Below are positions 23,763 to 63,862 of a DNA stretch of 64,000 nucleotides, one piece after another. The stretch spans positions 124,001 to 188,000 of the IMG/VR virus record IMGVR_UViG_3300035180_001778; one strand, written 5' to 3'. The number at the start of each line of letters is the position of its first letter. The first letter of the stretch is position 1. Both the position numbers and the translations under genes were made by a program. Under the pieces are notes generated by a model. It did no database searches. It had not been told where the DNA came from and saw nothing but the letters and a program-made list of their open reading frames with translations.

Positions 23763-23909
23763 TTACATCTTCATCCGTGCTTCACTGATCGACGTACGAG
23801 CCTTCTGGAGATGATCCATCGCCTCACGGAGAAGGGACACGATCTCAGGACGCGACGACTTCATGTCCCCCATCAGCTCTTGGAGAGGTCGGTCAGGGTC
23901 CAACATCAT
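23763..23909 (-). CDS. Small helical protein (48 aa); possibly the -1 frame continuation of 23906-23998
   Basis: MMLDPDRPLQELMGDMKSSRPEIVSLLREAMDHLQKARTSISEARMKM; TAA abuts the HNH start. Confidence 0.5.
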   Translation of the reverse strand: MMLDPDRPLQELMGDMKSSRPEIVSLLREAMDHLQKARTSISEARMKM

Positions 23910-23998
23910 CCCCCCCAAATCTTGTTCAAACGATCCAACTGCTCTTTCGGGTCAGTTGTACGTCGAGCCGCCGTCCGCCGATCGTAGGAGTTACTCAT
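23906..23998 (-). CDS. 30-aa peptide with SYDRRTA tag
   Basis: MSNSYDRRTAARRTTDPKEQLDRLNKIWGG*, ending in a G7 tract. Confidence 0.5.
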   Translation of the reverse strand: MSNSYDRRTAARRTTDPKEQLDRLNKIWGG

Positions 23999-24009
23999 GA
24001 CTCATTCCC

Positions 24010-24870
24010 TCAGATCTTGGCCGTTGCGAAGAGGTCGTGAATCTTCGACGCCTGCTTCGAGAGCGCGTACAGATCCTTCTTCACCCAGGTGTGGGCCAGA
24101 TCCACCTCCTGAAGAAGAGAGCCGATCTTCGAGGTGACCGTGAGGAGATCGCCCTTGGCCTTGGCCGCATTGAACTTGCGTCCAGCCGCCACCAGACGAT
24201 CGATGCGGTCCTCCGTCACCATGACCGTCTGAAGGATCTCTCCCGCCAGCTTGGAGTTCTCCACGAGGGTTTCGTGAGAGGCGACCTTGGGGTGCGTGAT
24301 GTCCGTCGGAAGCTTCTGAGGAGCTTCCGGATTGACCGTGTCGACCTTGGGAGCCCCCATGGAGTTGAAGGCCGAGTTGCTCGACTGGTCGCCGAAGTTG
24401 GGAAGGCTGATGGCCGCAACCATCGCCCGAAGGCCTTTGAGAGCCTCCGAGGGGACCTTGCCGGCCGCAGCAAGATGGGTGATCGCAGCCACTTGGTGCT
24501 CGATCTGATCCAAGTGTTGCGGAAGGGTATTGGGGTTGAGAGTTTCGTCCGCCATGGGGCTGCTCGCGTCCTTTCCCGGCATGGGATGATGATCGTGTGC
24601 CGGAATAAGAGGACTAGCGGCCCACCTCGCTCGTCGAGGTACAAAGAGCGCCTCCATGGCGGCCAGGTCGATGGGGATCATCGCCTGCCCTTCTGCGTTG
24701 AACCGATCGAGCGCCTGCCTTGCGAGCCCACGGCCCGAGACAAGAGCTGCAACGAATTTCAAAACAGAAAGGGTCCCGAGGTTGTATCGGGACCCATCGG
24801 GGATTTGGACGTAGTTCGTGGGACCGTCAGTCCCAATCGTCACCGTCGTGAGCTGTCGTCGTACCGGCAC
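24010..24870 (-). CDS. Hypothetical protein, candidate internal virion protein
   Basis: 286-aa ORF with KVAS and RWAAS-type sites; possible internal start near 24555-24582. Confidence 0.65.
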   Translation of the reverse strand: MPVRRQLTTVTIGTDGPTNYVQIPDGSRYNLGTLSVLKFVAALVSGRGLARQALDRFNAEGQAMIPIDLAAMEALFVPRRARWAASPLIPAHDHHPMPGKDASSPMADETLNPNTLPQHLDQIEHQVAAITHLAAAGKVPSEALKGLRAMVAAISLPNFGDQSSNSAFNSMGAPKVDTVNPEAPQKLPTDITHPKVASHETLVENSKLAGEILQTVMVTEDRIDRLVAAGRKFNAAKAKGDLLTVTSKIGSLLQEVDLAHTWVKKDLYALSKQASKIHDLFATAKI

Positions 24871-24904
24871 ATACTAGCCAGGGTACGAAAGGAATCTCAT
24901 GACC

Positions 24905-25192
24905 CTACCTGCATTTGCACATGACCAGCCAAGCGGCTGGATTCGTGTTTTGCTGCTCGAAGGACAAAACTTGGTTCGGGTGCGCGCATGCTATCGACCC
25001 GGTATCCGACCACTTCACCTGACCCTGGTCCAGGCAAACGCCTCGCCGAACGTTCCAGTAGTGCTTCAACCCGAAGTAGAAAATGGACACCAAAAGCAAC
25101 ACCCAGATCAGGATGTTGTACTTCCTGTGGGTCCAGAACTCGCCGGAGGAGATTGAAGGCTTCGTCGGGGACGGTTCACGGTAGGGATCCAT
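24905..25192 (-). CDS. Small single-TM membrane protein
   Basis: ILIWVLLLVSIFYFGL hydrophobic helix; GGTGTA-N10-ATG start. Confidence 0.7.
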   Translation of the reverse strand: MDPYREPSPTKPSISSGEFWTHRKYNILIWVLLLVSIFYFGLKHYWNVRRGVCLDQGQVKWSDTGSIACAHPNQVLSFEQQNTNPAAWLVMCKCR

Positions 25193-25201
25193 GTCCCTCC
25201 T

Positions 25202-25525
25202 CTACACCAAAAGGAGGGACCGACCCCAAGAAGACATGAAGGCCTTGATGTTTTCCCGCCCAATGCAGTTCTCAGAATGGATCTCGAACTCCGGCGGATT
25301 GACGCAGCCGAACTCGTAAAAGAGCCAGTTCAAGAACCGCATCGCGGTATCATCACCCCCAAGATCGTGGTCGAGATCCATGAACATGGGAGGCCCATGC
25401 GCTTCGACCAAGAGACGAGCCTCATCAGATGATGTCGCGCCAAGGAACCCCTCGGGAGTCCACCGAGCCCGAAGATCCGGGTCGGGATCCGCGAGCTGGT
25501 CGTCAAGCCAAAGTCTCCAGGTCAT
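25202..25525 (-). CDS. Cyclic-phosphate-processing receiver-like domain protein
   Basis: LWLDD...R..PEGF...DLDHDLG..D...IHSEN..G pattern. Confidence 0.75.
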   Translation of the reverse strand: MTWRLWLDDQLADPDPDLRARWTPEGFLGATSSDEARLLVEAHGPPMFMDLDHDLGGDDTAMRFLNWLFYEFGCVNPPEFEIHSENCIGRENIKAFMSSWGRSLLLV

Positions 25526-25530
25526 AGGGC

Positions 25531-25692
25531 TCAGAAGGGAAGCTGCGTTTCGGGGCGCATGTAACGCTCTCGCGGATGTACTGGGACCTTGGGGTACTCC
25601 AAGTCGACGAAGACAGGAGGTTCATCATACATGGGAGCCTCCCTCTGCCAAACCTTGAGGTTCTCACGGGCAATCTGACCGGGCGTTTTCAT
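25531..25692 (-). CDS. Small hypothetical protein (53 aa)
   Basis: MKTPGQIARENLKVWQREAPMYDEPPVFVDLEYPKVPVHPRERYMRPETQLPF; GAAGGAG RBS. Confidence 0.6.
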   Translation of the reverse strand: MKTPGQIARENLKVWQREAPMYDEPPVFVDLEYPKVPVHPRERYMRPETQLPF

Positions 25693-25705
25693 GACGCTCC
25701 TTCAG

Positions 25706-25948
25706 TCAGTAGGGGAATTCGCCAAGCTGGTCCAGGATGGACTTTCGGATCACCGCACCATCTTTCCTGGTGACAGGTTCGATCTCCAGCTCGACGATCT
25801 GAAGCTGACGATCACGGTCATCGTAGATCGTCTCCTCGATCGAAGGCTTGTCGTAGAATCGGTCCGAGGTGGCGTCCGGGTCCTTGTGTAAGGGTGCGTA
25901 CATGCGGTCGCAGGTTTCGTCGGTCCCCAAAATATCGTAGATCGGCAT
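25706..25948 (-). CDS. Hypothetical acidic protein
   Basis: ORF with AGGA RBS in the minus-strand run. Confidence 0.6.
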   Translation of the reverse strand: MPIYDILGTDETCDRMYAPLHKDPDATSDRFYDKPSIEETIYDDRDRQLQIVELEIEPVTRKDGAVIRKSILDQLGEFPY

Positions 25949-25983
25949 GGTTGTCCTACAGGGTCCTGGCGAGCCCGATCAAC

Positions 25984-26841
25984 TCAGACGCGCCGGAGAA
26001 GCTCGATCATGTGCGTGACGAGGATCAGCGTACCCTGTTCTGGCCCCCAGAGCCATAGCCCATCCGTGTGCCACTCCGGAAGCTCCCCCATGGCTCTTTC
26101 CATGTCGTTGAAGACGCTGGCGGCCGTGAAGAGGTTGAACTCCAGGTAGGCGCTCTTGCGAGACACCAAGACCTTGCGCCGGCTGTCGGTCTCCTCGCTG
26201 ACGAGAAGCCCCCTCAAGTGCCCCATCCGGAACAGCTCGACCCAACCCCCAAGGAGCTGGTCATGGGTCTCCGCGAGCACGAACCCGTTGGACCCGACGT
26301 CGAGAACCTTCACCTTGGGCCACGACCCGACCACAGGGCCCCCGCCGTCAAGATGGTCCCGAATCCACCCCACGGCGGTGGTGAGCCGCTCCCCCAGCTC
26401 GCGCTTCGAGAGACCCTCTTCGGGGAAGAACGACCGGAGAAGCCGGAAGAAGCGCCCACGCTCGGGTTCGATGTGCCCCAACATCGAAAAGCCCCGCCGA
26501 TGTATGAGGTCCACCGACGCCACCACCCCAGGCATCGCCGGGTGAATCGCCAGGGTCCGATCAAAGAAGAGAGCCATCGCGAAGATGGTGTCGAGGTCGC
26601 GGATTCGGTGCGTAGCGAACAAAAGCGGGAAAGGCCTCCCAAGGATGAGATCCTCGAAGAAGCTCGTCAGGGCGCCAGGGTCCGCTTGTCCGAACCCTGC
26701 CCCATGGTGCTCGTAGACGAAAAGGCCCGGGTCGCCCGCTTGCTCACGACTTGCCCCTGTCTCGAACGCGACAGCATCAGGAACGATGACGGGGAGCGTC
26801 GGATCTACGCGGGCGTTGAAAGTGATTGGTGTAGGCATCAC
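25984..26841 (-). CDS. DHH-like phosphoesterase
   Basis: YEHHG, HRIRDLD and VDLIH metal-binding-like motifs. Confidence 0.5.
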   Translation of the reverse strand: MMPTPITFNARVDPTLPVIVPDAVAFETGASREQAGDPGLFVYEHHGAGFGQADPGALTSFFEDLILGRPFPLLFATHRIRDLDTIFAMALFFDRTLAIHPAMPGVVASVDLIHRRGFSMLGHIEPERGRFFRLLRSFFPEEGLSKRELGERLTTAVGWIRDHLDGGGPVVGSWPKVKVLDVGSNGFVLAETHDQLLGGWVELFRMGHLRGLLVSEETDSRRKVLVSRKSAYLEFNLFTAASVFNDMERAMGELPEWHTDGLWLWGPEQGTLILVTHMIELLRRV

Positions 26842-26864
26842 CTAGATGCCTACACCAATCACTT
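26820..26864. repeat. Perfect 20-bp inverted repeat with 5-nt loop over a start codon
   Basis: AAGTGATTGGTGTAGGCATC-accta-GATGCCTACACCAATCACTT. Confidence 0.95.
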
Positions 26865-27041
26865 CAGGACGAAGGTCTCTCGGATCCAGTAGGAGGGGGG
26901 ATCTCCCATAAGAGCATCCAAAGCGATCATCTCGAACCGCTTTACGATCCAGTTCGCGGCCAGTTCACGCGACGCAAAAGGCCTCACACCGTGGACTTCT
27001 TGGTTACGCTCGACGCTCATGACCGTGTATACGATTCGCAT
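26859..27041 (-). CDS. Small hypothetical protein (60 aa)
   Basis: MRIVYTVMSVERNQEVHGVRPFASRELAANWI... Confidence 0.5.
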   Translation of the reverse strand: MRIVYTVMSVERNQEVHGVRPFASRELAANWIVKRFEMIALDALMGDPPSYWIRETFVLK

Positions 27042-27381: not shown

Positions 27382-27417
27382 GGGAGTCCTACAGCTAGGA
27401 CCCCCATCCGATCAACC

Positions 27418-27789
27418 TCAGACGCGGCTTTCCCAGTACTCGTCCTTCGACTCGTACAGCTCCATGTAATCCTCGATGCGATCCTTCAGGTTGTCCCGCC
27501 AGTTCTGGGTCCGCTTCACGATAGGCGCCTTGTCGGGCACCATCGGCCGGTCCTTGCCGAAGTTGTAGAACTGGACGCGGATCGCATCCTCCCCTTGGCC
27601 GGCTCCCATCCCCGAGTTGGGATGGATCGAAGTCCAGATCCGGATCCCGATGGTCTTCGCCTCGTTCAGGAAGAGGTTGATGACGACCTCCCCCCGGCTG
27701 GCCCCATGCTGAGGCCTGAGCGCCCGGAAGGCTCGCTTGAGGTACGTCTCCATCTCGGGCAACGTGATCTGCGTGAATTGAGCGGCCAT
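27418..27789 (-). CDS. Conserved phage hypothetical protein
   Basis: IRIWTSI...GEDAIRV...VKRTQNWRDNL; start overlaps the helicase stop. Confidence 0.7.
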   Translation of the reverse strand: MAAQFTQITLPEMETYLKRAFRALRPQHGASRGEVVINLFLNEAKTIGIRIWTSIHPNSGMGAGQGEDAIRVQFYNFGKDRPMVPDKAPIVKRTQNWRDNLKDRIEDYMELYESKDEYWESRV

Positions 27790-30700
27790 CACGCCCTCCG
27801 ATCGTACGAGGTGTCAACCCCGCCGGCTGTCATGAAGTAAGAAGCCATGTCCTCGAAGGGCGGGGGCCCATGATCCCCGAAGTCCCCCTCATCCTCAGCC
27901 GTCTTCGGAGTACCCACTTCCGCGGGCAGAGGAACGTCCTTCTCGACGTTCTCCCCCGGCTTGAGGCCTGCCTCGAAGACGAACCGTGAAGGTGCTTTGG
28001 CACAAACCACGGTGAGGTTCTTCGCGGCCCGGGTGAGAGCGACGTAGGCGAGATTCCGCTCCGCTTCGAGCTTCCTCAGCTCCTCTTCCGGATCCGGCGG
28101 GGGCTCATCCTTCTTGGGCTTCTTCTCGACCGGGAAGATACCCGCCGGCATGCACACGAAGACGTTCGGCCACTCGGCCCCCTTCACGCTGTGGACCGTG
28201 GAAAGGACCATGCACCGCGGACGCTCTTCCCGCTGCTCCGGCGGGAGCTTCTTCTGATCCAGAGCCCACTTCTTGAGGTCGACTCGAAGTGTCTTCGAGG
28301 CATCCGAGTAGCGCTCCAGCTTCTTGATGAAGCCCAGAGCCGTCGTCGGGTCGTGACCCAAGTCGTGGTCCTGCGCGTTCGGCTGTGCGATCTGGTAGAG
28401 GAACTGCACAGCTCCAAGCCCCTTGGCAGGGTTCTCCGGAGCGGGAGGTGCCGAAGGATCCCCAGGCTCTCCCTCCGTCTTGGGGAGCATGAGGTTGCCT
28501 TCGTCATCGACGACAGGCTTGACCGAGTCCGGCTCTTCCTCTTCCTCGGCGTCTTCGCTCCCATCCGAGTAGAGGGACATGTCATTCGAGATATGCTCTC
28601 GAAGAGTGACGGTCTTTCGGGTGTCCTCCCCCGTCCGGTTGTTGCGGTAGCCCGTCGTCGCCTTGACGTCGTCGAGGATGATCTTGAAAACATCCTCGAC
28701 GGGCATCGACGTGTCGTTGATGGTCTTCTTGAGCTTCGCGACCTGAGCCCCCATTTCGAGGAGGGTCTCCGTCATCTCGTCGACAGACTTCCGCCAGAGC
28801 CAATCCCCCGTGGCCATCAGCTTGTTCTTGTACGGCTGCTTGAGGGCTTCGGCGAGCTGGCGAGCGTAAACCCTCTTGGTGATCACCTCGAAGGGGTTGA
28901 GCGACTTCACGTCCATCCCGTCCCCACGAGCGATGTCCTGGAGAGCCTCCTTGACGATCTCGGCCACCTTGTCAGTCGAGAGGTAGAGACCACGATCCGG
29001 CTTCGTCAGGCTCGACGCCAACGAGAGCTGCATCTTCTCGAAGTTGGTCCCGCCCGCGAGGTCGAGGTAGCCAAGCACAGCCTTGGACTCAGGGGCTTCC
29101 AGGAAGCTCGACCCACCCACACGGGTGTACGGGATGCCCTCGATGATACAGGCCGTCTCGTAGTCGTTCAGCTCGTTGTTTGTACGAGCGAGAACAGCGT
29201 AGTCCTTCTCCTCGCTCGTCGGATTCGCACGAAGCTCCTTCGTGATCCGCTGAAGGGTATAGATGGCCCCAGAGGCGTTGTCCCCCGGCACCGTGACCTC
29301 GATCGAAGCTTCCTTGCGAGCCTTCTTCGGGTTCGCGCGAGCCTCCATCGGGATCTGGTTCGTGTTGTGGGCGACGAGCTTGTTGGCGCACTCGACGATC
29401 TCCGGAGCGCAACGGTAGTTCGTCTTGATCATCCGAGTCTTCCAGCCCTCCTTGCCGTTGAGGGCGGTGAAGAGATCCGGGCGAGCCCCGCGGAACTGGT
29501 AGATGGCCTGCTTGTCGTCACCGACCATCCAGAGGGACTTGCCGTCCTTGCCATCCGTGATGTGCTGAGACATCAGGTCGAAGACTTGGTGCTGAACCGT
29601 GTTGAGGTCCTGGCACTCGTCCACGAGGATGTGGTCGAACATGTTCTGAACCAAGGTGCGAGCCTTGGGGTCACGAACGAGGATGTCCCGGTAGACCTTG
29701 ACCATGTCGTCGAGATCCCCGAGTCGCTCCTTGCCCGGACGGAATGTGTCCATCCACTTGTCGGCGGTCTTGCTCTGCGAGCACGGCGGACGCCAGCCCG
29801 GGATGTCCCCCTTGAGACCCGAGCCGATGTGATACCAGATCGCCGCCTTGATCTCCTCTTTCGAGGTGGCATTGGCGAGCGCTTGCTCCGGAGAGACGTC
29901 GTTGCCCTTCCAGACGTTGATGAGCAAGCCAGCCTTCTTGGCGCTGGGAATGTCTTCCAACGCCTTCGGTTGGACCTTGTAGTAGGACGCCAGAGCCACA
30001 GGCCCACATTCCGTCCAGACACCCTTGATGGCCAGCGTGTGGTTGATGGGCTTCGGGCCACGCTTGAACTTCTGCCCCGGCTCCGGGTTGGCGATGAGCC
30101 GCTCCTCAGAGAAGAGCTTCTGCTCCTCTGGAGTACCGAAGGCCGGGATGTTGGACCCTCGATCGCCCACGATGAATCGCATGAAGAGCGAGTGCATCGT
30201 CCCCACGGACATCTGCTTCATCTCGTTCTCGCCGCACTTCTTGGCGATCTTGTCCCGCAGCTCGTTCGCCGCCTTCCGGTTGAACGAGCACGCCAGGATG
30301 CGGCCGGGCTTGACCCCGCGATCCTTGATGAGGTACTGAATTCGAGCGACCAGAGTCGTCGACTTCCCAGCCCCAGCTCCCGCGGCAATGAGAACCTTGC
30401 CGTCCGTGAGAGCTGCTCCCCGTTGCTCCGGGTCGAGGGAACGGAGGGGCTCCGGGACATTCTTCAGGTCTTCGGGGTCTGCCATGGCCGCTGCTACAGT
30501 TGCAGCCGCGATGCCAACAACCTGAGATTTCGTGACGGGAGCATCAGGCTCGTTTTTGGCGTCCAGAGACTTCAAGGCCGTCGCCTGAGCTTCCTCCTGA
30601 ACCCGCGAGATGATCTTGTCCTGGCGGTCTGTGGTGCCCTTCGTCTCCTCGGACGCAGGGTCGGCAGCTTCCGCCTTCATACGCTCGACGGCCAGCTCCT

Positions 30701-31301
30701 TGGACGCGTCGACCCGCCCGCCAGTTTGGCTAACCGCTGTCACAGGTGTCGGAGGAACCCCCGACCCTGCCAATTTGGCAGCCTCGTCGATCCAGTTCCG
30801 GATCCGGATGTTCTTGACGGGGATGACCGCGAACTTGTCGAGGGCGGCATCTGCATCGTCCACCATCGAGGCCGCGATAGCCGCTCGAACCTCTTGGAGG
30901 GCCTTGTTCGTGGAGAACACCGCCCGCATTGTCGAGGCACCACCCCGAGAGAGCAGGGTACGAATCTGGAGAGCCCGGCGAGCGGCCCCGTCCGGGGTCG
31001 GCCTCAGCCGAAGAGCCTTCTCCAGCATCTTCTTGTGGGTGTCCGACGGGAGGTTGGCTTTCATGAAGCCAGCGATGACCTCGCCGTGGAGCATGTCCGC
31101 CATTCGGAGCAGCTTCAGCCCGTTGGCCGTCATCTCGTCATGGGGGAGCCCAACCTCCTCCATGTACCGCATGTAGGTATCGAGGGCGAGAAGGAAGACC
31201 ACGTATTCGGCGATCTGGAGTTCGCCGAACGTCTTGTCGACCTCGACAACCTCTTCATCAGCGGCCTGACGACGGTCGTAGATCATCTGGGTGTCGTGCA
31301 T
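27789..31301 (-). CDS. UvrD/PcrA/Rep-family SF1 helicase with ~285-aa N-terminal extension
   Basis: Walker A AGAGAGKS, VDECQD, VGDDKQAIYQFRGA, NYRC, STVHSVKGAEW, ERNLAYVALTRA. Confidence 0.95.
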   Translation of the reverse strand: MHDTQMIYDRRQAADEEVVEVDKTFGELQIAEYVVFLLALDTYMRYMEEVGLPHDEMTANGLKLLRMADMLHGEVIAGFMKANLPSDTHKKMLEKALRLRPTPDGAARRALQIRTLLSRGGASTMRAVFSTNKALQEVRAAIAASMVDDADAALDKFAVIPVKNIRIRNWIDEAAKLAGSGVPPTPVTAVSQTGGRVDASKELAVERMKAEAADPASEETKGTTDRQDKIISRVQEEAQATALKSLDAKNEPDAPVTKSQVVGIAAATVAAAMADPEDLKNVPEPLRSLDPEQRGAALTDGKVLIAAGAGAGKSTTLVARIQYLIKDRGVKPGRILACSFNRKAANELRDKIAKKCGENEMKQMSVGTMHSLFMRFIVGDRGSNIPAFGTPEEQKLFSEERLIANPEPGQKFKRGPKPINHTLAIKGVWTECGPVALASYYKVQPKALEDIPSAKKAGLLINVWKGNDVSPEQALANATSKEEIKAAIWYHIGSGLKGDIPGWRPPCSQSKTADKWMDTFRPGKERLGDLDDMVKVYRDILVRDPKARTLVQNMFDHILVDECQDLNTVQHQVFDLMSQHITDGKDGKSLWMVGDDKQAIYQFRGARPDLFTALNGKEGWKTRMIKTNYRCAPEIVECANKLVAHNTNQIPMEARANPKKARKEASIEVTVPGDNASGAIYTLQRITKELRANPTSEEKDYAVLARTNNELNDYETACIIEGIPYTRVGGSSFLEAPESKAVLGYLDLAGGTNFEKMQLSLASSLTKPDRGLYLSTDKVAEIVKEALQDIARGDGMDVKSLNPFEVITKRVYARQLAEALKQPYKNKLMATGDWLWRKSVDEMTETLLEMGAQVAKLKKTINDTSMPVEDVFKIILDDVKATTGYRNNRTGEDTRKTVTLREHISNDMSLYSDGSEDAEEEEEPDSVKPVVDDEGNLMLPKTEGEPGDPSAPPAPENPAKGLGAVQFLYQIAQPNAQDHDLGHDPTTALGFIKKLERYSDASKTLRVDLKKWALDQKKLPPEQREERPRCMVLSTVHSVKGAEWPNVFVCMPAGIFPVEKKPKKDEPPPDPEEELRKLEAERNLAYVALTRAAKNLTVVCAKAPSRFVFEAGLKPGENVEKDVPLPAEVGTPKTAEDEGDFGDHGPPPFEDMASYFMTAGGVDTSYDRRA

Positions 31302-32172: not shown

Positions 32173-32173
32173 C

Positions 32174-35735: not shown

Positions 35736-36368
35736 TCAGTGCAGATGGGTCGCGACCTCACCCCACTGCTTGAGGTCATCCGTCATCCGACCGACGTCTT
35801 CCTCAGTGTTGACGACCTTCTCCCCATTCATCGTCATGAAACGCTTCCCCGAGATCATCTCTTCGAGGTGATGAAGCTTGGCCTTCGTCCACCTCTTGAG
35901 GATCGACAGGTCTGCTTGGGGGTATTTCTTGACGAAGTCGAGAGCTTCGTTCGCCCCCGAGTATTCGGTGAGAGCGTCCGAGTGGACGTGTTGCTTCTCG
36001 TCCAGGAACAGGGCTTCGGCAATCGCCGAGTACGTTGAAGCCTTTGGGGCATTCCAGCGCTGCGTCTTGGGGTTCATCGTCTGGCTCACGAATCGAAACC
36101 CCTTGCCCGGCTTCATCTCGATCCAGTATCGGATTTTGGTCCGAAGCTTGAACCCGTACGGGTAGTCGTCCACCACGTAGGCGGTCGCTTCGCTGTCGTG
36201 CCCGTAGAGAGGGGTGTGGCTCGCGACGAGCACTCGACCAGCCACGCGGTTTGCGAGGGCTGCGAGTCGAGCTGCCATGACTTCGCGAGAAGGGCCCGCG
36301 GAGTGTGCATAGTCGAGGAGACCTTGCACTGCGGCGATGAACTGTCGGGGGGAAGCGATCTTATACAT
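35736..36368 (-). CDS. Hypothetical protein with virion-type N-terminal tag
   Basis: KIASP...LANRVAGRV leader, then AYVVDDYPYGFKLR...W...K.STY domain. Confidence 0.75.
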   Translation of the reverse strand: MYKIASPRQFIAAVQGLLDYAHSAGPSREVMAARLAALANRVAGRVLVASHTPLYGHDSEATAYVVDDYPYGFKLRTKIRYWIEMKPGKGFRFVSQTMNPKTQRWNAPKASTYSAIAEALFLDEKQHVHSDALTEYSGANEALDFVKKYPQADLSILKRWTKAKLHHLEEMISGKRFMTMNGEKVVNTEEDVGRMTDDLKQWGEVATHLH

Positions 36369-36939: not shown

Positions 36940-38187
36940 TTACTGAGTTTTCAGAAGATCAGATTTCTGAAAACTCAGCACTTCTGAAGAGATACGATTT
37001 CTCAAAAAAGATTCGTCGGCGTACGGTTCGTCCTCTCGGACAGAGAAGAGCTGCATCCCCGACGCTTTCGCCAGCTCAACCTTAGCCTTGTCTCGCGCCT
37101 GAAGGGCGTCGAACTCCTCTCGTTCCGTGACGTAAGTGCTCGGGAACAGCCAGTGCTGAACACCATGGAACTCGACGAGGAGCTGATGGCTGGGGAAGTA
37201 GCCGTCGAAGCGGAACCGACGCCCCGTCTTCGGGTTGGTAAAGCGAGGGTCGGACCACTCGACTTCGTAGGACGCCCCACCCAGGATCCGTGAGACCATC
37301 TCCAGGCAGATTGCCTGCTGTATGGCCGTGTGAGAGATGGGCATCCCGTGCTTCTCGCACTCCCTCCGAATCGTCACGAAGGCGTGCCCAAGAGCCGCGA
37401 TGGCCTTCCCCACCGAGACCTTCCCGTTCTTGAGCCGGAAAGGAAGGAGCTGCTCCCTGGTCAAGGAGACCTCAGTTCCGTTCGTCCAGTGTTGCACCTT
37501 TCGAGTTTCAGAAAGAGCGGCACCTCGTTGACGAACCACATCTGAGGTCTCTTTGGTGAGCCCCTTAAAATGGGAAACGAAGTCATCAGGCCGAGCGCCC
37601 ATACGCGCTACTCGGGGATCGGTCTCCTTCGTCAGACCTGCATTCCACCGGCCGGCATTGGCGGACATCTTCGCTCGGGTATCCTGCGAGAGAGCTTGCC
37701 CCTTGAGGTAGGACTTGTCTCGGGTGCCGCACCGTTGAGACATGACCTCCCCCTCGTACGCCATGTCTGGATGCGCGTTCTGAAGATGGCTCACCAGGCT
37801 CTCAGCCCGATACCCACAAATCTGGCAGATGACGTAGTCAAGCCCCTCCTCTTTCAAAGCCCAGAACTCTTCCACGTCCCGACCTCGGCACTCAGGACAT
37901 CGCGTGTCATGCACCGAAGCGGCGAAGGTGTACCCCACCTCCCGCGGAGCATCGCAGGAAGAGCAAAGGATGGTCTTCTTCAGACCCGCCCGCGGCTTGG
38001 TCGCATGAGATTGAGCCGCCGCAGCCTGACGCTTCTCGGTCAGGGCTTCAGCTCGAATGAGGGCTTGGGGGTGTTTGGCTCGGTAGGCATCCGCCGTCAG
38101 CCCATGCTTCTTCAGATGGGTGGCCAGCGTCGATGCCTGAAACCCGCACTCACGGCACTGAACGAAATCACGATTCTCAACAAGCAT
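36940..38187 (-). CDS. Putative homing endonuclease (C2H2 Zn fingers, NUMOD3-like repeats, Vsr/DUF559-like nuclease)
   Basis: CREC..HLKKH, CQIC..HLQNAH, WNAGLTKETD repeats, RFDGYF...VEFHGVQH...D..K. Confidence 0.75.
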   Translation of the reverse strand: MLVENRDFVQCRECGFQASTLATHLKKHGLTADAYRAKHPQALIRAEALTEKRQAAAAQSHATKPRAGLKKTILCSSCDAPREVGYTFAASVHDTRCPECRGRDVEEFWALKEEGLDYVICQICGYRAESLVSHLQNAHPDMAYEGEVMSQRCGTRDKSYLKGQALSQDTRAKMSANAGRWNAGLTKETDPRVARMGARPDDFVSHFKGLTKETSDVVRQRGAALSETRKVQHWTNGTEVSLTREQLLPFRLKNGKVSVGKAIAALGHAFVTIRRECEKHGMPISHTAIQQAICLEMVSRILGGASYEVEWSDPRFTNPKTGRRFRFDGYFPSHQLLVEFHGVQHWLFPSTYVTEREEFDALQARDKAKVELAKASGMQLFSVREDEPYADESFLRNRISSEVLSFQKSDLLKTQ

Positions 38188-45116: not shown

Positions 45117-46154
45117 CTACTGGTCGTTGTGCTCTTCCATCGCCAGAACCAGGAGACCCTCTGCGACGGCCGTCATCGGGTCGACGGCGGACCGGATCTC
45201 GCTGATCTGGATCGGGAAGCCCTTCTTCTTGACGTTCTCGAACTCCTCGCGGAAGATGTCGAGGAAGCCCCCTGCCCGGCTCGTGCCTCCCGAGACCACG
45301 AAGGGAATCGGCTCTTGAAGGCTGAGCGTGTTCTGGACACGGCGGAACTGCACTGCGATGTTCTCCAGGCAGTAGCGAATGAGGGTCCGGATGTAGAGGG
45401 CGAGAGCCTCTTCCTCACGGCCCTTCGGCTTCGAGATGTCGATCCCACGCTCCTTGATCGAGCACATGCGAGACGCCGTCGAGCCCGTGGCCTTTGCCGC
45501 ATGACTGTCGATCCAGTCCCCACCCCGAGCGAGCGCGAAGTCCATCCCCATCACCGTCTGGTAGGCGAGGGCAATGTTGCACATACCCGAGCCGAACGAG
45601 ACAGAGAGCCCCGAGAAGCCCTCCGCAGCGCACTGGCTGTAGATGATGGCCATGGCCTCGTTCATGGGGTGCGGCGTATAGCCGTGCTCCGCGACGATCT
45701 TCCGGAAGATCTCCGTGTGGTAGACGACGTCCTGCTCCTGGTCATCGATCGGAGACGCCGGCACCGAGTAGAAGCAGTGCTCGTCAGGAATCGTGGGGTC
45801 TTCCAAGACATGGTAGATGAGCAGGCTGAGGATCTGCTGTGCGTCCAGCTCCCCCGAGGAGATCACCCCGCGGCTGAGAGGTCGGCGAACTTCCCTCTTG
45901 AAGAGGTTCGCCATGACCATGGCCGAGTCCCCGAGAACGAGCAGGTTGCCGTCCTTCTCGACGTAGTTGACCTTCGAGAGCCGGAGCTGCTTCTTGGCCT
46001 CCAAGTCGAGGTCAATGAAGGCGTCACGCATCCGCTTGGTCTTGATGTCGTTGCCAGCCATCCGGGCGCTGACGATGTTCATCGTGCCGATGTCGAGGCC
46101 GACCCCCGGCTTGTATCCCGTGCGATCCTGTCCCATCTGATCCTTCTTTCTCAT
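45117..46154 (-). CDS. Actin-like ATPase (MreB/MamK/ParM superfamily)
   Basis: Phosphate-1 GLDIGTMN, RRPLSRGVI, connect-1 NEAMA, phosphate-2 SFGSGMCN, GGDWID, adenosine VSGGTS, AVAEG. Confidence 0.85.
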   Translation of the reverse strand: MRKKDQMGQDRTGYKPGVGLDIGTMNIVSARMAGNDIKTKRMRDAFIDLDLEAKKQLRLSKVNYVEKDGNLLVLGDSAMVMANLFKREVRRPLSRGVISSGELDAQQILSLLIYHVLEDPTIPDEHCFYSVPASPIDDQEQDVVYHTEIFRKIVAEHGYTPHPMNEAMAIIYSQCAAEGFSGLSVSFGSGMCNIALAYQTVMGMDFALARGGDWIDSHAAKATGSTASRMCSIKERGIDISKPKGREEEALALYIRTLIRYCLENIAVQFRRVQNTLSLQEPIPFVVSGGTSRAGGFLDIFREEFENVKKKGFPIQISEIRSAVDPMTAVAEGLLVLAMEEHNDQ

Positions 46155-46867
46155 TTGACTGCCATATCCCGACGGTCGTACGACGCTGTTCGGGTCCGTT
46201 GTTTCAGAACGTAGATGTGCTCCTCGTGCTTGTCTGCAATCTCTTGGAGGAGATTGTCGGTCCCGTGGGAGAGCTGGCCACGTTCATCGAGGATGGCGTA
46301 GACCATCTTCTCAAAAGCGAGAAACCGATGCACCATCCTCAAGCTGAGGAGAGCATAGTCGCTCGGGGAAGGGTCAAGAGGGGCCCCCTCGTACATGACT
46401 CGAACCAGGACCGCCGCATGGTAGGAGTGCATCAGAGGGTGAGCAAGGATGTGATGCCCTGCCCCAACGGCACGCTCGGCCACACGATCGATGAGCTTCT
46501 GGACGTCGTCGTAGAGCCGGTCGTAGAGGAGATGATCCCCATAGAACGTCGTCCCTCGGGTCTGCCAGTGGTGAGACTGGTGAACCATGGCCTCTGCTCG
46601 AAGGAACGCGAGAATCGCCGCCAGCTCGGAAAGAGGCGCACCCCCGTAATCGGCTGCGATGCTCTGGAGGATCTGGGACAGAATGATGAGTGGAGCATCC
46701 GCTTCCTTCTGTCCCGCAGTCACAGGCATTCGAGACTTCGACTCAGGGAGATAGGGAGGCCCATGCTGGGAGGGATCGTACATCGTGGGGTCGTGCCACA
46801 TTGCAAAGATCCCCTCGGCATGTTCGCTCTCTTCTCGCTCAGGTAGCTCCGGGTCTCCCTGGCGCAT
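46151..46867 (-). CDS. Ferritin/Dps-like protein
   Basis: HQSHHWQTRGTTFYGDHLLYDRLY...IDRVAER...NLLQEIADKHEEHIY. Confidence 0.8.
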   Translation of the reverse strand: MRQGDPELPEREESEHAEGIFAMWHDPTMYDPSQHGPPYLPESKSRMPVTAGQKEADAPLIILSQILQSIAADYGGAPLSELAAILAFLRAEAMVHQSHHWQTRGTTFYGDHLLYDRLYDDVQKLIDRVAERAVGAGHHILAHPLMHSYHAAVLVRVMYEGAPLDPSPSDYALLSLRMVHRFLAFEKMVYAILDERGQLSHGTDNLLQEIADKHEEHIYVLKQRTRTASYDRRDMAVK

Positions 46868-53522: not shown

Positions 53523-53972
53523 TCAGTCCTCCAAGGTGGACTCTGACGCCCTTGGCTGAGACCACCCCGACTTGCCTTCGATGCGATCCTTGAGGGCCTC
53601 TGCGAACGCCTGGGGGTCCGTCACATGCCCTTGGACCTTCGCGACGCACCTTGCAACAGACCCTCCAATGCTCTCCCAGAACTTCTTCCGGGAGTCATCA
53701 GTCCACCCTTCAGGAAGGTCTTTCCACTCCGCAGCTTGATGAGCTGTGGCCGCGAGCTTGAGCATGTCCTGCCCATAGATGACCGACGCGCGAATTCGGC
53801 GGATCCCCAGAGAAGCCATACGCTGCCCACAAGGCGGGCAGACCTCGGCGACATCCTCGGGGTTCAACCAGAAATCCTGGTTGAGGGCGACCTTCTTTGA
53901 CCCCGAGTAGCGATGAGCCACCCGAGAGGTCAAGTCAGAACCAGCCGCGTCGTGTTTTTCGGGGAGTGCCAT
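53523..53972 (-). CDS. Hypothetical protein, candidate internal virion protein (start uncertain)
   Basis: TSRVAHRY tag, KVA site, CPPC, LPEGWTDDS.KKFW. Confidence 0.6.
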   Translation of the reverse strand: MALPEKHDAAGSDLTSRVAHRYSGSKKVALNQDFWLNPEDVAEVCPPCGQRMASLGIRRIRASVIYGQDMLKLAATAHQAAEWKDLPEGWTDDSRKKFWESIGGSVARCVAKVQGHVTDPQAFAEALKDRIEGKSGWSQPRASESTLED

Positions 53973-59225: not shown

Positions 59226-59232
59226 GTCACGA

Positions 59233-60195: not shown

Positions 60196-60256
60196 GGTGC
60201 TCCTACCCCTTCAAAATGGGATCGTCGATCTGAAGTCATAAAAGGAAGCTCGAACG

Positions 60257-60892
60257 CTAACGCGGGAAAGCCGCGGTACAGACGATGGAGAAAGGCACAG
60301 ACCCCCCGCCACCTCGAACCCACAAGCTCCCCTGTGTTGAATTCAAGCCGAATTGCGAAACAGCGTTGGGCAGCACCTTCGATTCTGCTCCGTCCTGTTC
60401 CATAGACACGAACAGAGAGTTGGCCGCATCCTGGTTGTGGACCCTGAAGTCCTGCATCAGCCGAGGGAAGTCGATCTGTAGGGACCCCGTGCTGTCCGAC
60501 GCATTGGGGGCTGTACCCTGAATCGTAACCGCCCCAATCCCATGTTGAGCCGTATCCGCCAGGATGAGTCCAGCGGCCGAGACCTGGACTTCGCTACCCC
60601 CAAAAGGGACCCGCCAGAGCTGGAGCCAGAAGGACTTCCCGTCGGGGATGCTGTAGGTCGTCGGATTGAAGACGATCCTGACTTGCCGTCCCGAGGTCGG
60701 CTGAGCACCCACAACGGCGATGTTGATCGCCGGGTCAAGGAAGCCGACGTTCGTCGAGTCCAAGAACGTGGTGAAGGACCCATCGAAGTTCGCCGCCCAC
60801 TTGAGACGGTAGGTCTGGGTCCCATCGACCAAGGGAGTGACCAGATCGACGATAGGGGCTCGCCGCCTGATGACTGAAAACGTTCTGTTCAT
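60257..60892 (-). CDS. Beta-rich virion protein
   Basis: ORF coupled to the upstream zinc-ribbon gene. Confidence 0.65.
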   Translation of the reverse strand: MNRTFSVIRRRAPIVDLVTPLVDGTQTYRLKWAANFDGSFTTFLDSTNVGFLDPAINIAVVGAQPTSGRQVRIVFNPTTYSIPDGKSFWLQLWRVPFGGSEVQVSAAGLILADTAQHGIGAVTIQGTAPNASDSTGSLQIDFPRLMQDFRVHNQDAANSLFVSMEQDGAESKVLPNAVSQFGLNSTQGSLWVRGGGGSVPFSIVCTAAFPR

Positions 60893-61299
60893 CCTGCCTT
60901 CTCCTTCTGGACAAGAGGATCATACGTTGCAGCGAGATGGTTGCCGTTTTCAGACCGGGCAACCTCCTGTGCTTCCTTCCAAGTTCCGGTGTCCATCCCC
61001 TTGTAGTTCGGGATGAGCCGCGACTTGAAGACGTGATCCCGTTCCTTCTTGGCGAGGATCTCTCGACGCCGGGCCCTCAGCTTGTTCTCGATGAGAGCCT
61101 TCCCCGGCCAACCCCCACTCTCCCCATCCTTCAGAACGAAGCTGATCTCCCCCGGGCTGAAGACGATCTCCACTTTCCCTTGGCAAGAGGAGCACTCCAG
61201 GAGCTTCACTCCGAGCTTCACCACTTCGTAATCCGAGAAGGAAAGACGGAGACTGTTGGTGACCTGGCACCCAAGACAGCGAGACGTGTAGGTAGGCAT
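60889..61299 (-). CDS. FmdB-like zinc-ribbon protein
   Basis: MPTYTSRCLGC...ECSSC...FVLKD..SGGW. Confidence 0.75.
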   Translation of the reverse strand: MPTYTSRCLGCQVTNSLRLSFSDYEVVKLGVKLLECSSCQGKVEIVFSPGEISFVLKDGESGGWPGKALIENKLRARRREILAKKERDHVFKSRLIPNYKGMDTGTWKEAQEVARSENGNHLAATYDPLVQKEKAG

Positions 61300-61312
61300 T
61301 CTGATTCCTTTT

Positions 61313-62116
61313 TCATTTTGGAGGCGGAACCTCCCATTTGCGAACGAAGTCGAGCACGGCTGCAACGTGTTTGCACACGCGGTTTTCGCGCTCCGGATCT
61401 GTGACGTTTGGAGCTGAGGCTGTACCTCTGGGCTTCCCATCAATGTATCCTTCTTGCTTCGCGTGGTATTCGGGTCCCTGCCACTGCCAGGAAGGACACG
61501 AGCAAGCGAAGTGAAGGTCCATCTTGGTCAACTTGACGACCTTCCCAAGACGGGTAGCCTTGAGCCGGACGACCTTGGGACCCTTGCCGGAGTCGACTGC
61601 GAAGATCCAGCGCAGATTGCCGGCGTCCACCCTTTTGAGGGTCACCCGGCACTTCTTGGCTCGATCTCGAATCTGACGGGACAACCCCTGCTCAATGTGC
61701 TCGACCCGAGCGGCCGTCATCACCCGAACGGGAGCCCGCTCCATGAAGAACATGTGGGCAACGAAAGAGGCGGTCAGACCTTCAGGATGGCCTTCTCGGT
61801 AGGGGTACTTCGGTTTCGCAGAGTCATCCTGCTTCCCACCCCCGCTCCAGCCAATCCCATCATGCTTGTCCGCGTTGTCCTCGTTGACGTCGGGATGCGA
61901 TTGGTCCTTGAGGAGATCGTCGGCGTTGTCCACATCATAGATGGACGTGTCCGTACCCCGGTCCGAATCCCTGGAGTCACTCTCGGGCTTGTTGTAGGTG
62001 CTCTGCCCCGGGATGTCCTTGTCAAGAGACAAACCGCGAGGCGAAGGACCCCCACCAGGGAGCTTGGACTCTCCAGTGGGACCCACCCAAGAGGACACAG
62101 AGTATCGACTCACCAT
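61313..62116 (-). CDS. SWIM-type zinc-finger protein
   Basis: CSCPSW...CKHVAAV. Confidence 0.7.
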   Translation of the reverse strand: MVSRYSVSSWVGPTGESKLPGGGPSPRGLSLDKDIPGQSTYNKPESDSRDSDRGTDTSIYDVDNADDLLKDQSHPDVNEDNADKHDGIGWSGGGKQDDSAKPKYPYREGHPEGLTASFVAHMFFMERAPVRVMTAARVEHIEQGLSRQIRDRAKKCRVTLKRVDAGNLRWIFAVDSGKGPKVVRLKATRLGKVVKLTKMDLHFACSCPSWQWQGPEYHAKQEGYIDGKPRGTASAPNVTDPERENRVCKHVAAVLDFVRKWEVPPPK

Positions 62117-62430
62117 GCCGGCGGAGGCTTGAACTTCCGTAGCTTGTCCGCCAGAACTTCAGCGGAGCGAAATGCTTGACCGATTTGATGGTCAAGCTCG
62201 TAGAGAACATCGCGGGTATCCTGAACCTGACGGTCGCCCGGACCAGGGTATCCGCTGACACCCTGAAAGTCCTCCTTCAGAGCTTGAACGTGATCGTTCA
62301 CATCACGAAGAGGGCGACGCAATTCGATGCGTTTCTTCACGAGAGCTTCAAGCTCTCCGGCAAGCTTGTCCGGAGACACAGCATCGGATGCTTGAAGAAA
62401 TCGCGCACTGACACGATCTTCAATAGACAT
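62110..62430 (-). CDS. Helical protein, candidate internal virion protein
   Basis: MSIEDRVSARFLQAS N-terminal tag. Confidence 0.65.
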   Translation of the reverse strand: MSIEDRVSARFLQASDAVSPDKLAGELEALVKKRIELRRPLRDVNDHVQALKEDFQGVSGYPGPGDRQVQDTRDVLYELDHQIGQAFRSAEVLADKLRKFKPPPAW

Positions 62431-62431
62431 C

Positions 62432-63862
62432 TCAGTGCTTGTCCTTGACGACGTTCTTGTTCTTCTCCCACTGGTCGGCGGCCTTCTCGGCATCCTCATC
62501 CGACATGCTGGGGTTGGCCTTCTGGAAGCCCTTCATGACGTCCTCGCGGGAGTTGGCCTGCTGAAAGATGGCGGACTGCATGGTCGCCGCATCCATCTGC
62601 ATCGAGTCGGCGAGCACCTTCCGAAGGACGGACGCGAGCTGCGTCCGGCTCGGGTTCTTCTGCGTCGACAGGGTCGTTGCCGCCTGTTGGAAGAAGCGTG
62701 AAGCCTTCTTCGAGATGTCCCCAGCCTGACGCTGGTTCCCCTCCAGGTGGGCGATGAGAGAGACGAGACGAGCCATCGGGACCTTGCCCGTGGCATCGGC
62801 AATCTCTGCCATCTTGAGGAGTTCCGCAGCCGCTTCTTTCGTGTTCTTCATGATCGTGTGCCTTTCTTGGGGGTGGTAACTTGCTTGTCTCGGTCCTGCA
62901 CAGGCCTCACCAACAGCCCGTGCGAGATCCACCACCTGATCTCCCACGTAACTCAAGATGTTTTCGACAACCGCCTGTTTACCCAGATTGCCTTCAATCT
63001 GGTCAAGCGCGTTCTCAATGTCGCGGATGGCTTTGGGGAGCTTATCTCGACGAGGATTGGGGCTTTCAAGTCCCTGGTTGAAAGCGTTACCCATCTCCCG
63101 GAATGTTGCCGAGCCTGCCTGTTTTGTAGCCATTGTCGTGCTCTCATCTCTTGCGAAAAGCCCCAAAAACTTCGGGGGATTGATAGGCTTCAAGGGTTCA
63201 GGCCCATTGAACGGAGGCGGATCCTTGTTCAAGGCAGCCGTCATGCCCATCATCGACGCCAGGTTGTAACAGGCGTTGGCGAGCTTGTTGAGAAGAGGCT
63301 TGGGCTCTGCCTTCGGAGCGTTCTTCTTGGCGAATGCTTCGACTTCATTCAACACCGAGGTGCCTTCAGAGATCACCCCTCGGATGTCGACGTTGTCGGA
63401 GCCAAACCGACCCCCCGAATGGACCCCGCCCTCGTAAGAGGCGATCAGCTCCCGGAGAATCTTCTCCCCAACTTGAGCTTCCTTGTCTGTGGACCGGCGC
63501 TTCAAATAGGGCAGACGGATGTCCTGAAGAACACCTTCAAGTTCCTCCGCCTTTTCAGGCTTGAGATTCTGCTTGATTTCTTCGTAGTCGAGGCGAGCGG
63601 CAGCCATGGCCGATGCGTCCAAAGCCTTGTCGAGCTTGAACAGCATGTCGGGAATCCCGTGGATCAAATGCCCCGCCACCTCGAAGAGCTGATCCCGATT
63701 TTCGGCCTTGTCGATGAGGTCGACGGCTTCTTGAACGTACTTCTTGAGTTGTGCTGTACGGAGACGGGCGTCTCCCAGCTCTTCAATGAGGTACACGACG
63801 ACGCCGGAAGCGTTCTTTTCGTGTCCTGATCGACTCAGACAACCGCCGCTAGATTCTGTCAT
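62432..63862 (-). CDS. Modular helical protein, candidate internal virion protein
   Basis: 476 aa; KNAS, KEA, KQAG, RQAS and RQAG sites; one lower-GC module at ~62880-63260. Confidence 0.7.
   Translation of the reverse strand: MTESSGGCLSRSGHEKNASGVVVYLIEELGDARLRTAQLKKYVQEAVDLIDKAENRDQLFEVAGHLIHGIPDMLFKLDKALDASAMAAARLDYEEIKQNLKPEKAEELEGVLQDIRLPYLKRRSTDKEAQVGEKILRELIASYEGGVHSGGRFGSDNVDIRGVISEGTSVLNEVEAFAKKNAPKAEPKPLLNKLANACYNLASMMGMTAALNKDPPPFNGPEPLKPINPPKFLGLFARDESTTMATKQAGSATFREMGNAFNQGLESPNPRRDKLPKAIRDIENALDQIEGNLGKQAVVENILSYVGDQVVDLARAVGEACAGPRQASYHPQERHTIMKNTKEAAAELLKMAEIADATGKVPMARLVSLIAHLEGNQRQAGDISKKASRFFQQAATTLSTQKNPSRTQLASVLRKVLADSMQMDAATMQSAIFQQANSREDVMKGFQKANPSMSDEDAEKAADQWEKNKNVVKDKH

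What the first reader, a model, noticed from the sequence alone, without database searches (positions are those of the whole stretch)
23906..63862. Shared peptide tags (YDRR, RVAxRF/Y, K/R-x-A) across unrelated proteins
Seen: YDRR in MSNSYDRRTAA (23998), at both ends of the helicase (MIYDRRQAA; TSYDRRA*) and at the ferritin C-terminus (RTASYDRRD). RV.xR(F/Y) near N-termini: DRVAKRF (15324), DRVSARF (62430), SRVAHRY (53523 gene), NRVAGRV (36368). K/R-x-A sites (KTAA, KTAE, RQAS, RQAG, KQAG, KVAS) fall at module boundaries. Known: T4 and phiKZ target internal proteins to the head with propeptides cut by the prohead protease. Inference: a capsid-targeting and processing code that loads enzymes into the virion for co-ejection.
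Basis: partly seen in the sequence, partly recalled or inferred. Interest (0 to 1): 0.7.

Follow-up and report, generated by a model that had tools for sequence, protein, structure and literature searches.

The report
Terminal peptide tags in a huge phage
Unrelated proteins of this uncultivated 350-kb phage and its relatives carry short, selected peptide tags at their very ends, a lineage-specific address code whose reader is unknown, with the phage's own ClpX unfoldase at least as good a candidate as the capsid.

Summary
The YDRR observation is real and far beyond chance. The genome has 10 six-frame YDRR hits, and 8 lie within 10 residues of an ORF end. Codons vary synonymously, and the tagged proteins share nothing else. 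Helicase orthologues at 35-76% identity keep a [S/T]-Y-D-R-R-like motif, often at both ends (57 of 120 at the C-terminus; about 5% expected).

K/R-x-A is at chance level.

The tags are part of something larger. A third, C-terminal aromatic-acidic-basic tag sits on about 25 proteins here and on 73 of 538 (13%) in a complete relative. Those 73 fall into 70 unrelated clusters. Across helicase orthologues the tag classes replace one another, so they are lineage-specific versions of one kind of label.

The destination is not shown. Capsid loading remains possible. Three things weigh against it: no cleavage code exists, the major capsid protein is 90% identical while the tags diverge, and many tagged genes sit behind an accessory-gene promoter. 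All 8 related records encode a full ClpX (zinc-binding N-domain, GYVG pore loop, LGF ClpP-docking loop). ClpX is a machine that reads short tags at either terminus. I rank ClpX recognition first (about 0.35) and capsid targeting second (about 0.25).

The parts
27789..31301 (-). UvrD/PcrA-type SF1 helicase, 1170 aa. It carries a class A tag at both ends: N-terminal IYDRR (codons 31280-31269) and C-terminal SYDRRA* (27806-27795).
   Evidence: Pfam UvrD-helicase 2e-45 and UvrD_C 1e-29. Tags seen. Orthologues keep terminal tags.
46151..46867 (-). Ferritin/Dps-like protein, 238 aa, with a C-terminal extension ...ASYDRRDMAVK* (tag codons 46180-46169).
   Evidence: Pfam Ferritin 3e-05 and PHROG 3636/858. 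The orthologue in G004 ends YSYDRS*. The orthologues in G001 and G005 stop just before the extension.
23906..23998 (-). 30-aa ORF MSNSYDRRTAA...IWGG with a class A tag (23986-23975). Its stop overlaps, as ATGA, the start (23909) of a second small ORF that ends at 23763.
   Evidence: The G7 run at 23910-23916 is identical in contigs of three runs.
23772..24009 (-). 238-bp segment holding both small ORFs. It is absent from the 97%-identical relative G006, so this is an accessory cassette (an indel).
62110..62430 (-). 106-aa protein with the N-terminal class C tag MSIEDRVSARFLQASD (motif 62415-62398).
   Evidence: Helicase orthologues of other lineages start with ...SERVIERSLQASDP.
14722..15324 (-). 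200-aa ORF with the N-terminal class C tag MTMAITDRVAKRFW (motif 15303-15286). Its coding status is uncertain: the codon score is low and it has no homologue in G001 or G005.
53523..53933 (-). 136-aa ORF (TTG start) with the N-terminal class C tag (M)TSRVAHRY (motif 53924-53907). It fills a 413-nt gap between called genes.
35736..36368 (-). 210-aa protein.
   Evidence: the G005 homologue aligns from residue 1.
45117..46154 (-). Actin-like protein (Volactin family), translationally coupled to the ferritin gene. It is context only and not shown to be part of the tag system.
   Evidence: Pfam Volactin 2e-75. It is 69% identical and syntenic in G005.

Best explanation
What is shown. YDRR is the local form of a short linear motif (class A, consensus Y-x-Y-D-[R/Y/F]-[R/T]). 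It is selected at the peptide level. It sits within about 10 residues of the N- or C-terminus of otherwise unrelated proteins of a clade of uncultivated huge phages. It is one of at least three such terminal tag families. Class B is a C-terminal [S/T]-x-[W/F/Y]-[D/E]-[R/K/x]-[L/I/M] motif followed by an acidic tail. Class C is an N-terminal [D/E/R]-R-V-x-x-R-[F/Y]. The families replace one another on orthologous proteins in different lineages.

What is inferred. The tags are address labels read by a receptor that co-evolves with them. The most likely reader is the phage's own ClpX AAA+ unfoldase, a core gene of the clade. ClpX would read them through its axial pore or its zinc-binding N-domain.

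On this reading, tagged proteins are selectively engaged, unfolded or tethered. Examples are the helicase with two tags, the oligomeric Dps-like protein with one tag per subunit, and many small accessory proteins. They are probably handed to ClpP, either the host's or, in one relative, the phage's own. This would give timed turnover or remodelling, or the small tagged proteins would serve as adaptors.

Capsid loading is a live alternative, not excluded.
For: The tags are real and peptide-level. They are enriched at termini. Codons vary synonymously, including a CGN/AGR mix for Arg, with 3-periodic information content. Tagged proteins show no similarity outside the tag.

The tags are conserved. 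Sixteen IMG/VR loci and 120 database orthologues of the helicase keep terminal tags: C-terminal 57/120 against about 5% expected, N-terminal 36/120 against about 9%, both ends 29. The logo is [S/D/T]-Y-D-R-R. Other lineages carry SERVxER at the N-terminus or W.P...EE[Y/L/F]* at the C-terminus instead.

The scale is large. 73 of 538 genes in the complete relative G001 carry class B, about 25 do here, and about 10 do in G005, where the form shifts to SRFDLIG. An unbiased k-mer screen finds the same motifs.

A candidate reader exists. The phage ClpX (G000:C1:71326-72576, 416 aa) has zf-C4_ClpX + AAA_2 + D2-small domains. It aligns over its full length to E. coli ClpX (1e-107), with the GYVG pore loop and LGF at the IGF loop. 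It is present in all 8 related records, including fragments. It lies directly downstream of the YDRR-tagged 110-aa gene and among class C genes at 67-76 kb.

Known ClpX biology fits. ClpX reads short degrons at or a few residues from either terminus, and adaptors dock on the zinc-binding domain (PMC10782952). The SspB tail RGGRPALRVVK binds that domain, C-motif 2 is basic, and multiple sites or multimerisation enhance engagement (PMC3983244). Class C ([L/R]-R-V-V-x-R-F) resembles LRVVK.
Against: There is no direct evidence that ClpX binds any tag. Classes A and B do not match the five E. coli ClpX motif classes.

ClpP is absent from this record and from two complete relatives, and present only in G001. 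Proteolysis would therefore need the host's ClpP.

The clpX/tagged-gene adjacency is not conserved in G001 or G005.

It is not obvious why a helicase should carry conserved degrons at both ends.

The helicase and ferritin genes sit inside the structural gene block. One class B protein is ArdC-like, an anti-restriction family. Both facts suit virion delivery.
Confidence: 0.35

Rival explanations
1. Capsid-targeting tags. The tags dock cargo on the scaffold, protease or inner capsid during prohead assembly. Enzymes and small anti-defence proteins are then packaged and co-ejected, as with the T4 CTS or encapsulin cargo-loading peptides.
For: T4 internal proteins are a diverse set that shares only a capsid targeting sequence (PMC3012670). 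The helicase and ferritin genes lie in the structural block, and a head module with protease, portal and MCP is nearby. One YDRR mini-gene is a strain-variable cassette, like the T4 ip loci. Two tags on a monomeric enzyme against one per subunit on an oligomer fits avidity for a multivalent surface. An ArdC-like anti-restriction protein carries the related class B tag. A ferritin-like protein with a C-terminal tag parallels encapsulin cargo.
Against: There is no cleavage code: K/R-x-A is at chance and several tags are the very last residues. The MCP is 90-91% identical and the portal 64-67% identical in genomes whose tags differ. Class B genes sit mostly behind the accessory-gene promoter, which is rare in structural operons. 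13% of a proteome as cargo is unprecedented. The protein directly upstream of TerL, possibly TerS, carries class C.
Confidence: 0.25
2. Docking motifs for another hub. Candidates are the phage's beta-clamp, SSB or polymerase (a replisome toolbelt), the actin-like filament, or an import gate of an infection compartment.
For: Annotated clients act on DNA: a UvrD helicase, a Dps-like protein, ArdC-N, Zn-ribbon proteins and an NTase. The phage encodes its own DnaN-like clamp and clamp loader. Replication-module proteins and PolA carry aromatic-acidic tails or heads. From memory, class B in G005 (SRFDLMFDDDLF*) recalls the RB69 polymerase clamp-binding tail. The ferritin gene is coupled to the actin-like gene.
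Against: The tags do not match QL[S/D]LF. Most class B clients are small unknown proteins. The PolA N-terminal acidic motif does not follow the lineage-specific change of class B. No shell or chimallin-like gene was identified, though this was not searched exhaustively.
Confidence: 0.2
3. There is no peptide function. The motifs are by-products of nucleotide-level signals at gene boundaries (promoters, Shine-Dalgarno sites, stop-start overlaps), of nascent-peptide effects on termination and reinitiation, or of chance.
For: The last residues of class B are partly dictated by the next gene's SD: EV[L/I]* equals GAGGTG(ATC)TGA, and LED equals CTGGAGGAC. The two LLSYDRR* copies at 268 kb share a 35-nt DNA repeat that overlaps a GTTGATC promoter box, and one is out of frame. 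The distance from the aromatic residue to the stop is mostly 7 or 4.
Against: The core residues show synonymous codon turnover, with Arg split between CGN (40) and AGR (33) and third positions free. The same motifs occur at N-termini and on both ends of one protein. They are conserved on orthologues at 35-50% identity. Enrichment is 10-fold or more.
Confidence: 0.04

Closest known systems
ClpX recognition signals and adaptor tethering tails (five E. coli motif classes; SspB XB peptide RGGRPALRVVK; phage substrates lambda O, MuA, Mu repressor)
   Same: They are short peptides at or a few residues from either terminus. They are shared by unrelated proteins, several classes are read by one machine, and multiple sites or oligomers enhance engagement. 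A cognate ClpX with a zinc-binding domain is encoded by the phage. Class C resembles LRVVK.
   Different: The sequences of classes A and B match no described ClpX class. The ClpX here is phage-encoded and core to a clade, and up to 13% of the phage proteome is tagged. No binding or degradation has been shown.
T4 capsid targeting sequence of internal proteins (with gp21 processing)
   Same: A roughly 10-residue tag is the only thing shared by a diverse, fast-turning set of proteins. One tagged mini-gene here is a strain-specific cassette. A prohead protease gene is present.
   Different: The T4 CTS is strictly N-terminal and is followed by a protease site. Here the tags occur at either end, sometimes as the last residues. 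No cleavage consensus exists, and there are three interchangeable classes.
Encapsulin cargo-loading peptides on ferritin-like cargo
   Same: A terminal short peptide is appended to a ferritin-like protein and to other enzymes. The shell would be HK97-fold.
   Different: There is no GSL-type consensus and no dedicated shell gene next to the cargo. The only HK97-fold protein found is the phage MCP, which is almost invariant while the tags vary.
PIP-box / clamp-binding and SSB-tail type replisome SLiMs
   Same: They are terminal, short, aromatic plus acidic, and carried by many DNA enzymes. A phage clamp is present.
   Different: The consensus differs, and the clients are mostly small unknown accessory proteins.

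Membership tests
T4-type capsid targeting sequence / prohead-processed internal proteins | A short conserved peptide is the only similarity among otherwise unrelated proteins. | tested here: met
   blastp finds nothing outside the tags.
T4-type capsid targeting sequence / prohead-processed internal proteins | The tag is N-terminal and followed by a conserved prohead-protease cleavage site. | tested here: not met
   Tags occur at C-termini, some as the last residues. K/R-x-A is at chance. No conserved residue follows the tags in orthologues.
T4-type capsid targeting sequence / prohead-processed internal proteins | Tagged proteins are present inside virions. | not testable with these tools
   No cultured relative was found, and no proteome is available.
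ClpX recognition / tethering signals | A cognate ClpX with a zinc-binding N-domain, a GYVG pore loop and an IGF-type ClpP-docking loop. | tested here: met
   It is present in 8 of 8 related records.
ClpX recognition / tethering signals | The signal is short and lies at or within a few residues of the N- or C-terminus. | tested here: met
   The criterion is taken from PMC10782952.
ClpX recognition / tethering signals | The sequence matches a described ClpX motif class. | tested here: inconclusive
   Classes A and B match none. Class C (RVVxRF) resembles the XB tail LRVVK, by eye only.
ClpX recognition / tethering signals | ClpX-dependent binding, unfolding or degradation of tagged proteins. | not testable with these tools
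   This needs biochemistry.
ClpX recognition / tethering signals | A ClpP partner is available. | tested here: inconclusive
   ClpP is absent from this record and from complete G005 and G007, and present in G001. The host's ClpP is unknown.
Encapsulin cargo-loading peptide | A GSL-type consensus and a cargo gene adjacent to a dedicated shell gene. | tested here: not met
   The tag is SYDRR. The nearest HK97-fold gene is the phage MCP, about 20 kb away.
Tat signal peptide | A twin arginine followed by a hydrophobic h-region, N-terminal only. | tested here: not met
   RR is followed by polar or charged residues, and the tags also occur at C-termini.
Beta-clamp binding motif | A QL[S/D]LF-like motif that docks in the clamp cleft. 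| tested here: inconclusive
   The consensus is not matched. The complex prediction gave no answer.

The most novel reading that the evidence does not exclude
A clade of huge phages runs a lineage-specific 'terminal address code'. Interchangeable N- and C-terminal peptides sit on up to 13% of the proteome and are read by a phage-encoded ClpX. Dozens of unrelated small accessory proteins would then be substrates or adaptors of a virus-owned unfolding and proteolysis hub. Alternatively, ClpX would feed them into the virion.
Probability: 0.25. Interest if true: 0.85.

Novelty: new variant of a known kind. Interest (0 to 1): 0.72.

Why it matters
Short linear motifs that organise a whole viral proteome are familiar from eukaryotic viruses but hardly described in phages. 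Here the evidence is sequence-only but strong. Several tag families, conserved and co-evolving across a clade of 350-450 kb phages, mark a helicase, a Dps-like protein, an ArdC-like anti-restriction protein and scores of unknown small proteins.

That fate could be turnover, adaptor function or virion delivery. It would also give portable 6-10 residue tags for directing proteins in these systems.

Tried and rejected
1. DNA-level repeat as the cause of YDRR. Rejected for the set because the codons differ. Accepted only for the out-of-frame copy at 268748.

2. Paralogy of tagged proteins. Rejected.

3. A frameshift at the G7 run in the 30-aa ORF. The run is identical in contigs of three runs, and the two ORFs overlap as ATGA, so no frameshift is needed.

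4. The K/R-x-A cleavage code is at chance.

5. A Tat signal. There is no hydrophobic region.

6. The coiled-coil protein next to the clamp gene (...GYDKK*...SYDKR*...EFYRK*). It is probably a family-specific C-terminus and was left out of class A.

7. Complex prediction of clamp dimer + class B protein + helicase C-tail returned 'no answer'. It is no evidence either way.

8. Function of the tagged unknowns. Pfam, PHROG and Atlas searches gave nothing usable beyond GNAT, ArdC-N, M78, RlaP and Zn-ribbon.

9. No close cultured phage was found.

10. Literature searches found no description of these tags.

11. The MCP as co-evolving receptor was judged unlikely, because it is 90% identical across genomes with different tags.


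Full report
**Context.** The window is bases 124,001-188,000 of a single 350,469-bp contig with 60% G+C. IMG/VR classes the contig as a linear virus record of about 73% completeness. It carries a head module just beyond the window: MCP (phrog_2522, 6e-52), a head maturation protease, portal and TerL. It also carries tail-like genes, PolA, a DnaN-like clamp, a clamp loader and more. No cultured phage is close. Relatives are 230-450 kb contigs from metagenomes. The sequence recurs in sediment and microbial-mat runs.

**The YDRR observation.** In the whole genome there are ten, and eight lie within 10 residues of an ORF end:
- N-terminal: MSYSYDRRAS, MSNSYDRRTA, MHDTQMIYDRRQA and (M)MYSYDRRAN, plus the variant MAYSYDCRAT.
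- C-terminal: TSYDRRA*, ASYDRRDMAVK* and LLSYDRR* (twice).

In my gene set YDRR occurs 7 times against 0.6 +/- 0.7 in shuffled proteins. Six of those 7 lie in the 11% of residues near termini (P about 1e-5). The looser pattern Y[DE][RK][RK] is terminal 7 times against 0.3 expected. The codons differ between copies at synonymous positions (TAC GAY CGN CGN/AGG). The tagged proteins have no other similarity. The conservation is therefore at the peptide level.

Two caveats apply. First, the second LLSYDRR* (268748) is part of a 35-nt DNA repeat that overlaps a promoter-like box, and it is out of frame with the gene it follows. Second, the window's MSNSYDRR ORF is only 30 codons long. Its stop overlaps, as ATGA, the start of a second mini-ORF. 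The whole 238-bp cassette is absent from a 97%-identical relative. The G7 run inside it is the same in three assemblies.

**Conservation.** Helicase orthologues in 16 IMG/VR loci (35-46% identity) keep a related motif at both ends, with lineage-specific spelling:
- MMTYDRRP / LSYDRRSAR*
- DYDFR / DYERS*
- LSYDYG / DYDYQGN*
- RYERP / YTYDRTRN*
- MTYSRR / YGYDRRPL*
- MMISYDRS / YSYQRSAK*

Among 120 database orthologues, 57 have an aromatic-[DESQN]-[RKYF] motif in the last 14 residues (about 5% expected). 36 have it in the first 22 residues (about 9% expected), and 29 have both. The logo is [S/D/T]-Y-D-R-R. The ferritin orthologue of G004 ends YSYDRS*. Those of G001 and G005 end just before the extension, so the tag is an appended, gained-and-lost module.

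**The other two motifs.** RV..R[F/Y] is a genuine N-terminal motif: 9 genes against about 1 expected here, and 5 against 0.9 in G001. Several of these genes lie in or next to the head module, and several lie at 67-76 kb. The fourth, near 36368, is internal. K/R-x-A is at chance.

**A larger system.** I fetched two complete relatives: G001 (435 kb) and G005 (448 kb). An unbiased screen of terminal k-mers found the same motifs and one more. In G001, 73 of 538 called genes end with P-[S/T]-R-[F/Y]-[D/E]-R, followed by x-E-V-L* or a single hydrophobic residue. A few genes start with TR[F/Y][D/E]R, and one has the motif at both ends. The Arg codons split between CGN (40) and AGR (33), and third positions are free. 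Without the tag, the 73 proteins fall into 70 blastp clusters.

This genome has the cognate form P-T-x-W-[D/E]-x-L-L-E-D-D-[L/I/F]* on about 25 proteins. G005 has [S/T]-R-F-D-[L/M]-[I/M].... Part of the extreme tail (EVL*, LED) is dictated by the next gene's Shine-Dalgarno sequence, but the aromatic-acidic-basic core is not.

Annotated clients are few:
- the UvrD-type helicase
- the Dps-like protein
- a GNAT
- an ArdC-N/M78 protein
- an RlaP nucleotidyltransferase
- Zn-ribbon proteins

Helicase orthologues of other lineages carry SERVxER... (class C-like) at the N-terminus, or W.P...EE[Y/L/F]* (class B-like) at the C-terminus, in place of YDRR. The three classes are therefore interchangeable labels on the same client.

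**What reads the tags?** Nothing here shows it directly.

For the capsid model:
- T4 provides the precedent of diverse internal proteins that share only a CTS (PMC3012670).
- The helicase and ferritin genes lie in the structural block.
- One tagged mini-gene is a cassette.
- One client is ArdC-like.

Against the capsid model:
- There is no cleavage code, and some tags are the final residues of the protein.
- The MCP is 90-91% identical and the portal about 65% identical between genomes whose tags differ. Other proteins are 36-57% identical.
- Class B genes sit mostly behind a GTTGATC-N13-15-TGTAGGA motif a few bases before the ATG. This motif has about 100 copies, mostly before small accessory genes, and is rare in structural operons.

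**ClpX.** Scanning the genes shared by the three genomes revealed an AAA_2 protein. It is a full ClpX of 416 aa at G000:C1:71326-72576, with a C4 zinc-binding N-domain, an AAA+ module and a D2-small domain. It aligns end to end with E. coli ClpX (1e-107). The alignment includes the GYVG pore loop, and LGF sits where the ClpP-docking IGF loop lies.

The gene lies directly downstream of the YDRR-tagged 110-aa gene and among class C genes. It is present in all eight related records, even in fragments. ClpP is absent here and in two complete relatives, but present in G001.

ClpX is the textbook reader of short tags at or near either terminus of unrelated proteins. Adaptors dock on its N-domain through tails such as ...ALRVVK, which class C resembles. 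Multiple sites or oligomers enhance engagement (PMC10782952; PMC3983244).

This fit is circumstantial. I rank ClpX recognition first (about 0.35), capsid loading second (about 0.25), another hub third (about 0.2; clamp, SSB, actin-like filament or compartment import), and a nucleotide-level artefact last (about 0.04).

**Verdict.** The destination is open. As far as my literature searches reach, such a clade-wide code has not been described. I file it as a new variant of a known kind: terminal targeting or recognition tags.

Noticed in passing
window 25977, 27410 (minus strand), 34888, 51072 (plus strand); about 100 copies genome-wide: A promoter-like bipartite motif, GTTGATC-N13-15-TGTAGGA/TGTAGA, ends 3-8 nt before the ATG, which implies near-leaderless transcripts. 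It lies mostly in front of small accessory genes and is rare in the structural block. Related words (CGGTGTAGA, GGTATAGA) are enriched upstream of genes in G001 and G005.
   Followed up: partly
G000:C1:190469-191350, just beyond the window end: The major capsid protein (293 aa) is 90-91% identical between genomes whose helicase, PolA, clamp and ClpX are only 36-57% identical. This is unusually strong conservation.
   Followed up: partly
window 45117-46154 (minus strand): An actin-like protein of the Volactin family (Pfam 2e-75) is translationally coupled to the ferritin/Dps-like gene. It is syntenic and 69% identical in G005.
   Followed up: partly
window 23772-24009: A 238-bp cassette with two overlapping mini-ORFs is present here but absent from a 97%-identical relative. 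It sits between a 286-aa gene and a Cys-rich 223-aa gene.
   Followed up: yes
window 36940-38187 (minus strand): A 415-aa protein combines a ROS/MucR-type zinc finger with a C-terminal HNH/homing-endonuclease-like region.
   Followed up: no
L016 and database orthologues P0003, P0016, P0118 and others: Several helicase orthologues are 1.4-2.4 kaa long and carry intein domains (PF14890, PF14528) inserted in the helicase.
   Followed up: no
G000:C1:87319-90183 and orthologues: PolA starts with a conserved acidic-aromatic head (MMADEFDDDDIDFL; MPDFDDDDALNDLL in G001). Two replication-module proteins end in aromatic-acidic-LL tails. These may form a separate replisome docking system.
   Followed up: partly
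G000:C1:240297-242015 and 258227-259789: There is a GroEL-like chaperonin gene. From N-terminal sequence alone, there is also a ThiF/E1-like gene followed by several small genes.
   Followed up: no
G001:C1:274091-274564: Of three complete relatives, only G001 encodes a ClpP homologue. G001 is also the genome with the largest expansion of C-terminal tags.
   Followed up: partly
G001:C1:56415-57572: One protein may carry a class A tag near its N-terminus (TFSYDRRT, if it starts at an upstream TTG) and a class B tag at its C-terminus (PSRFDRLGEDL*).
   Followed up: no
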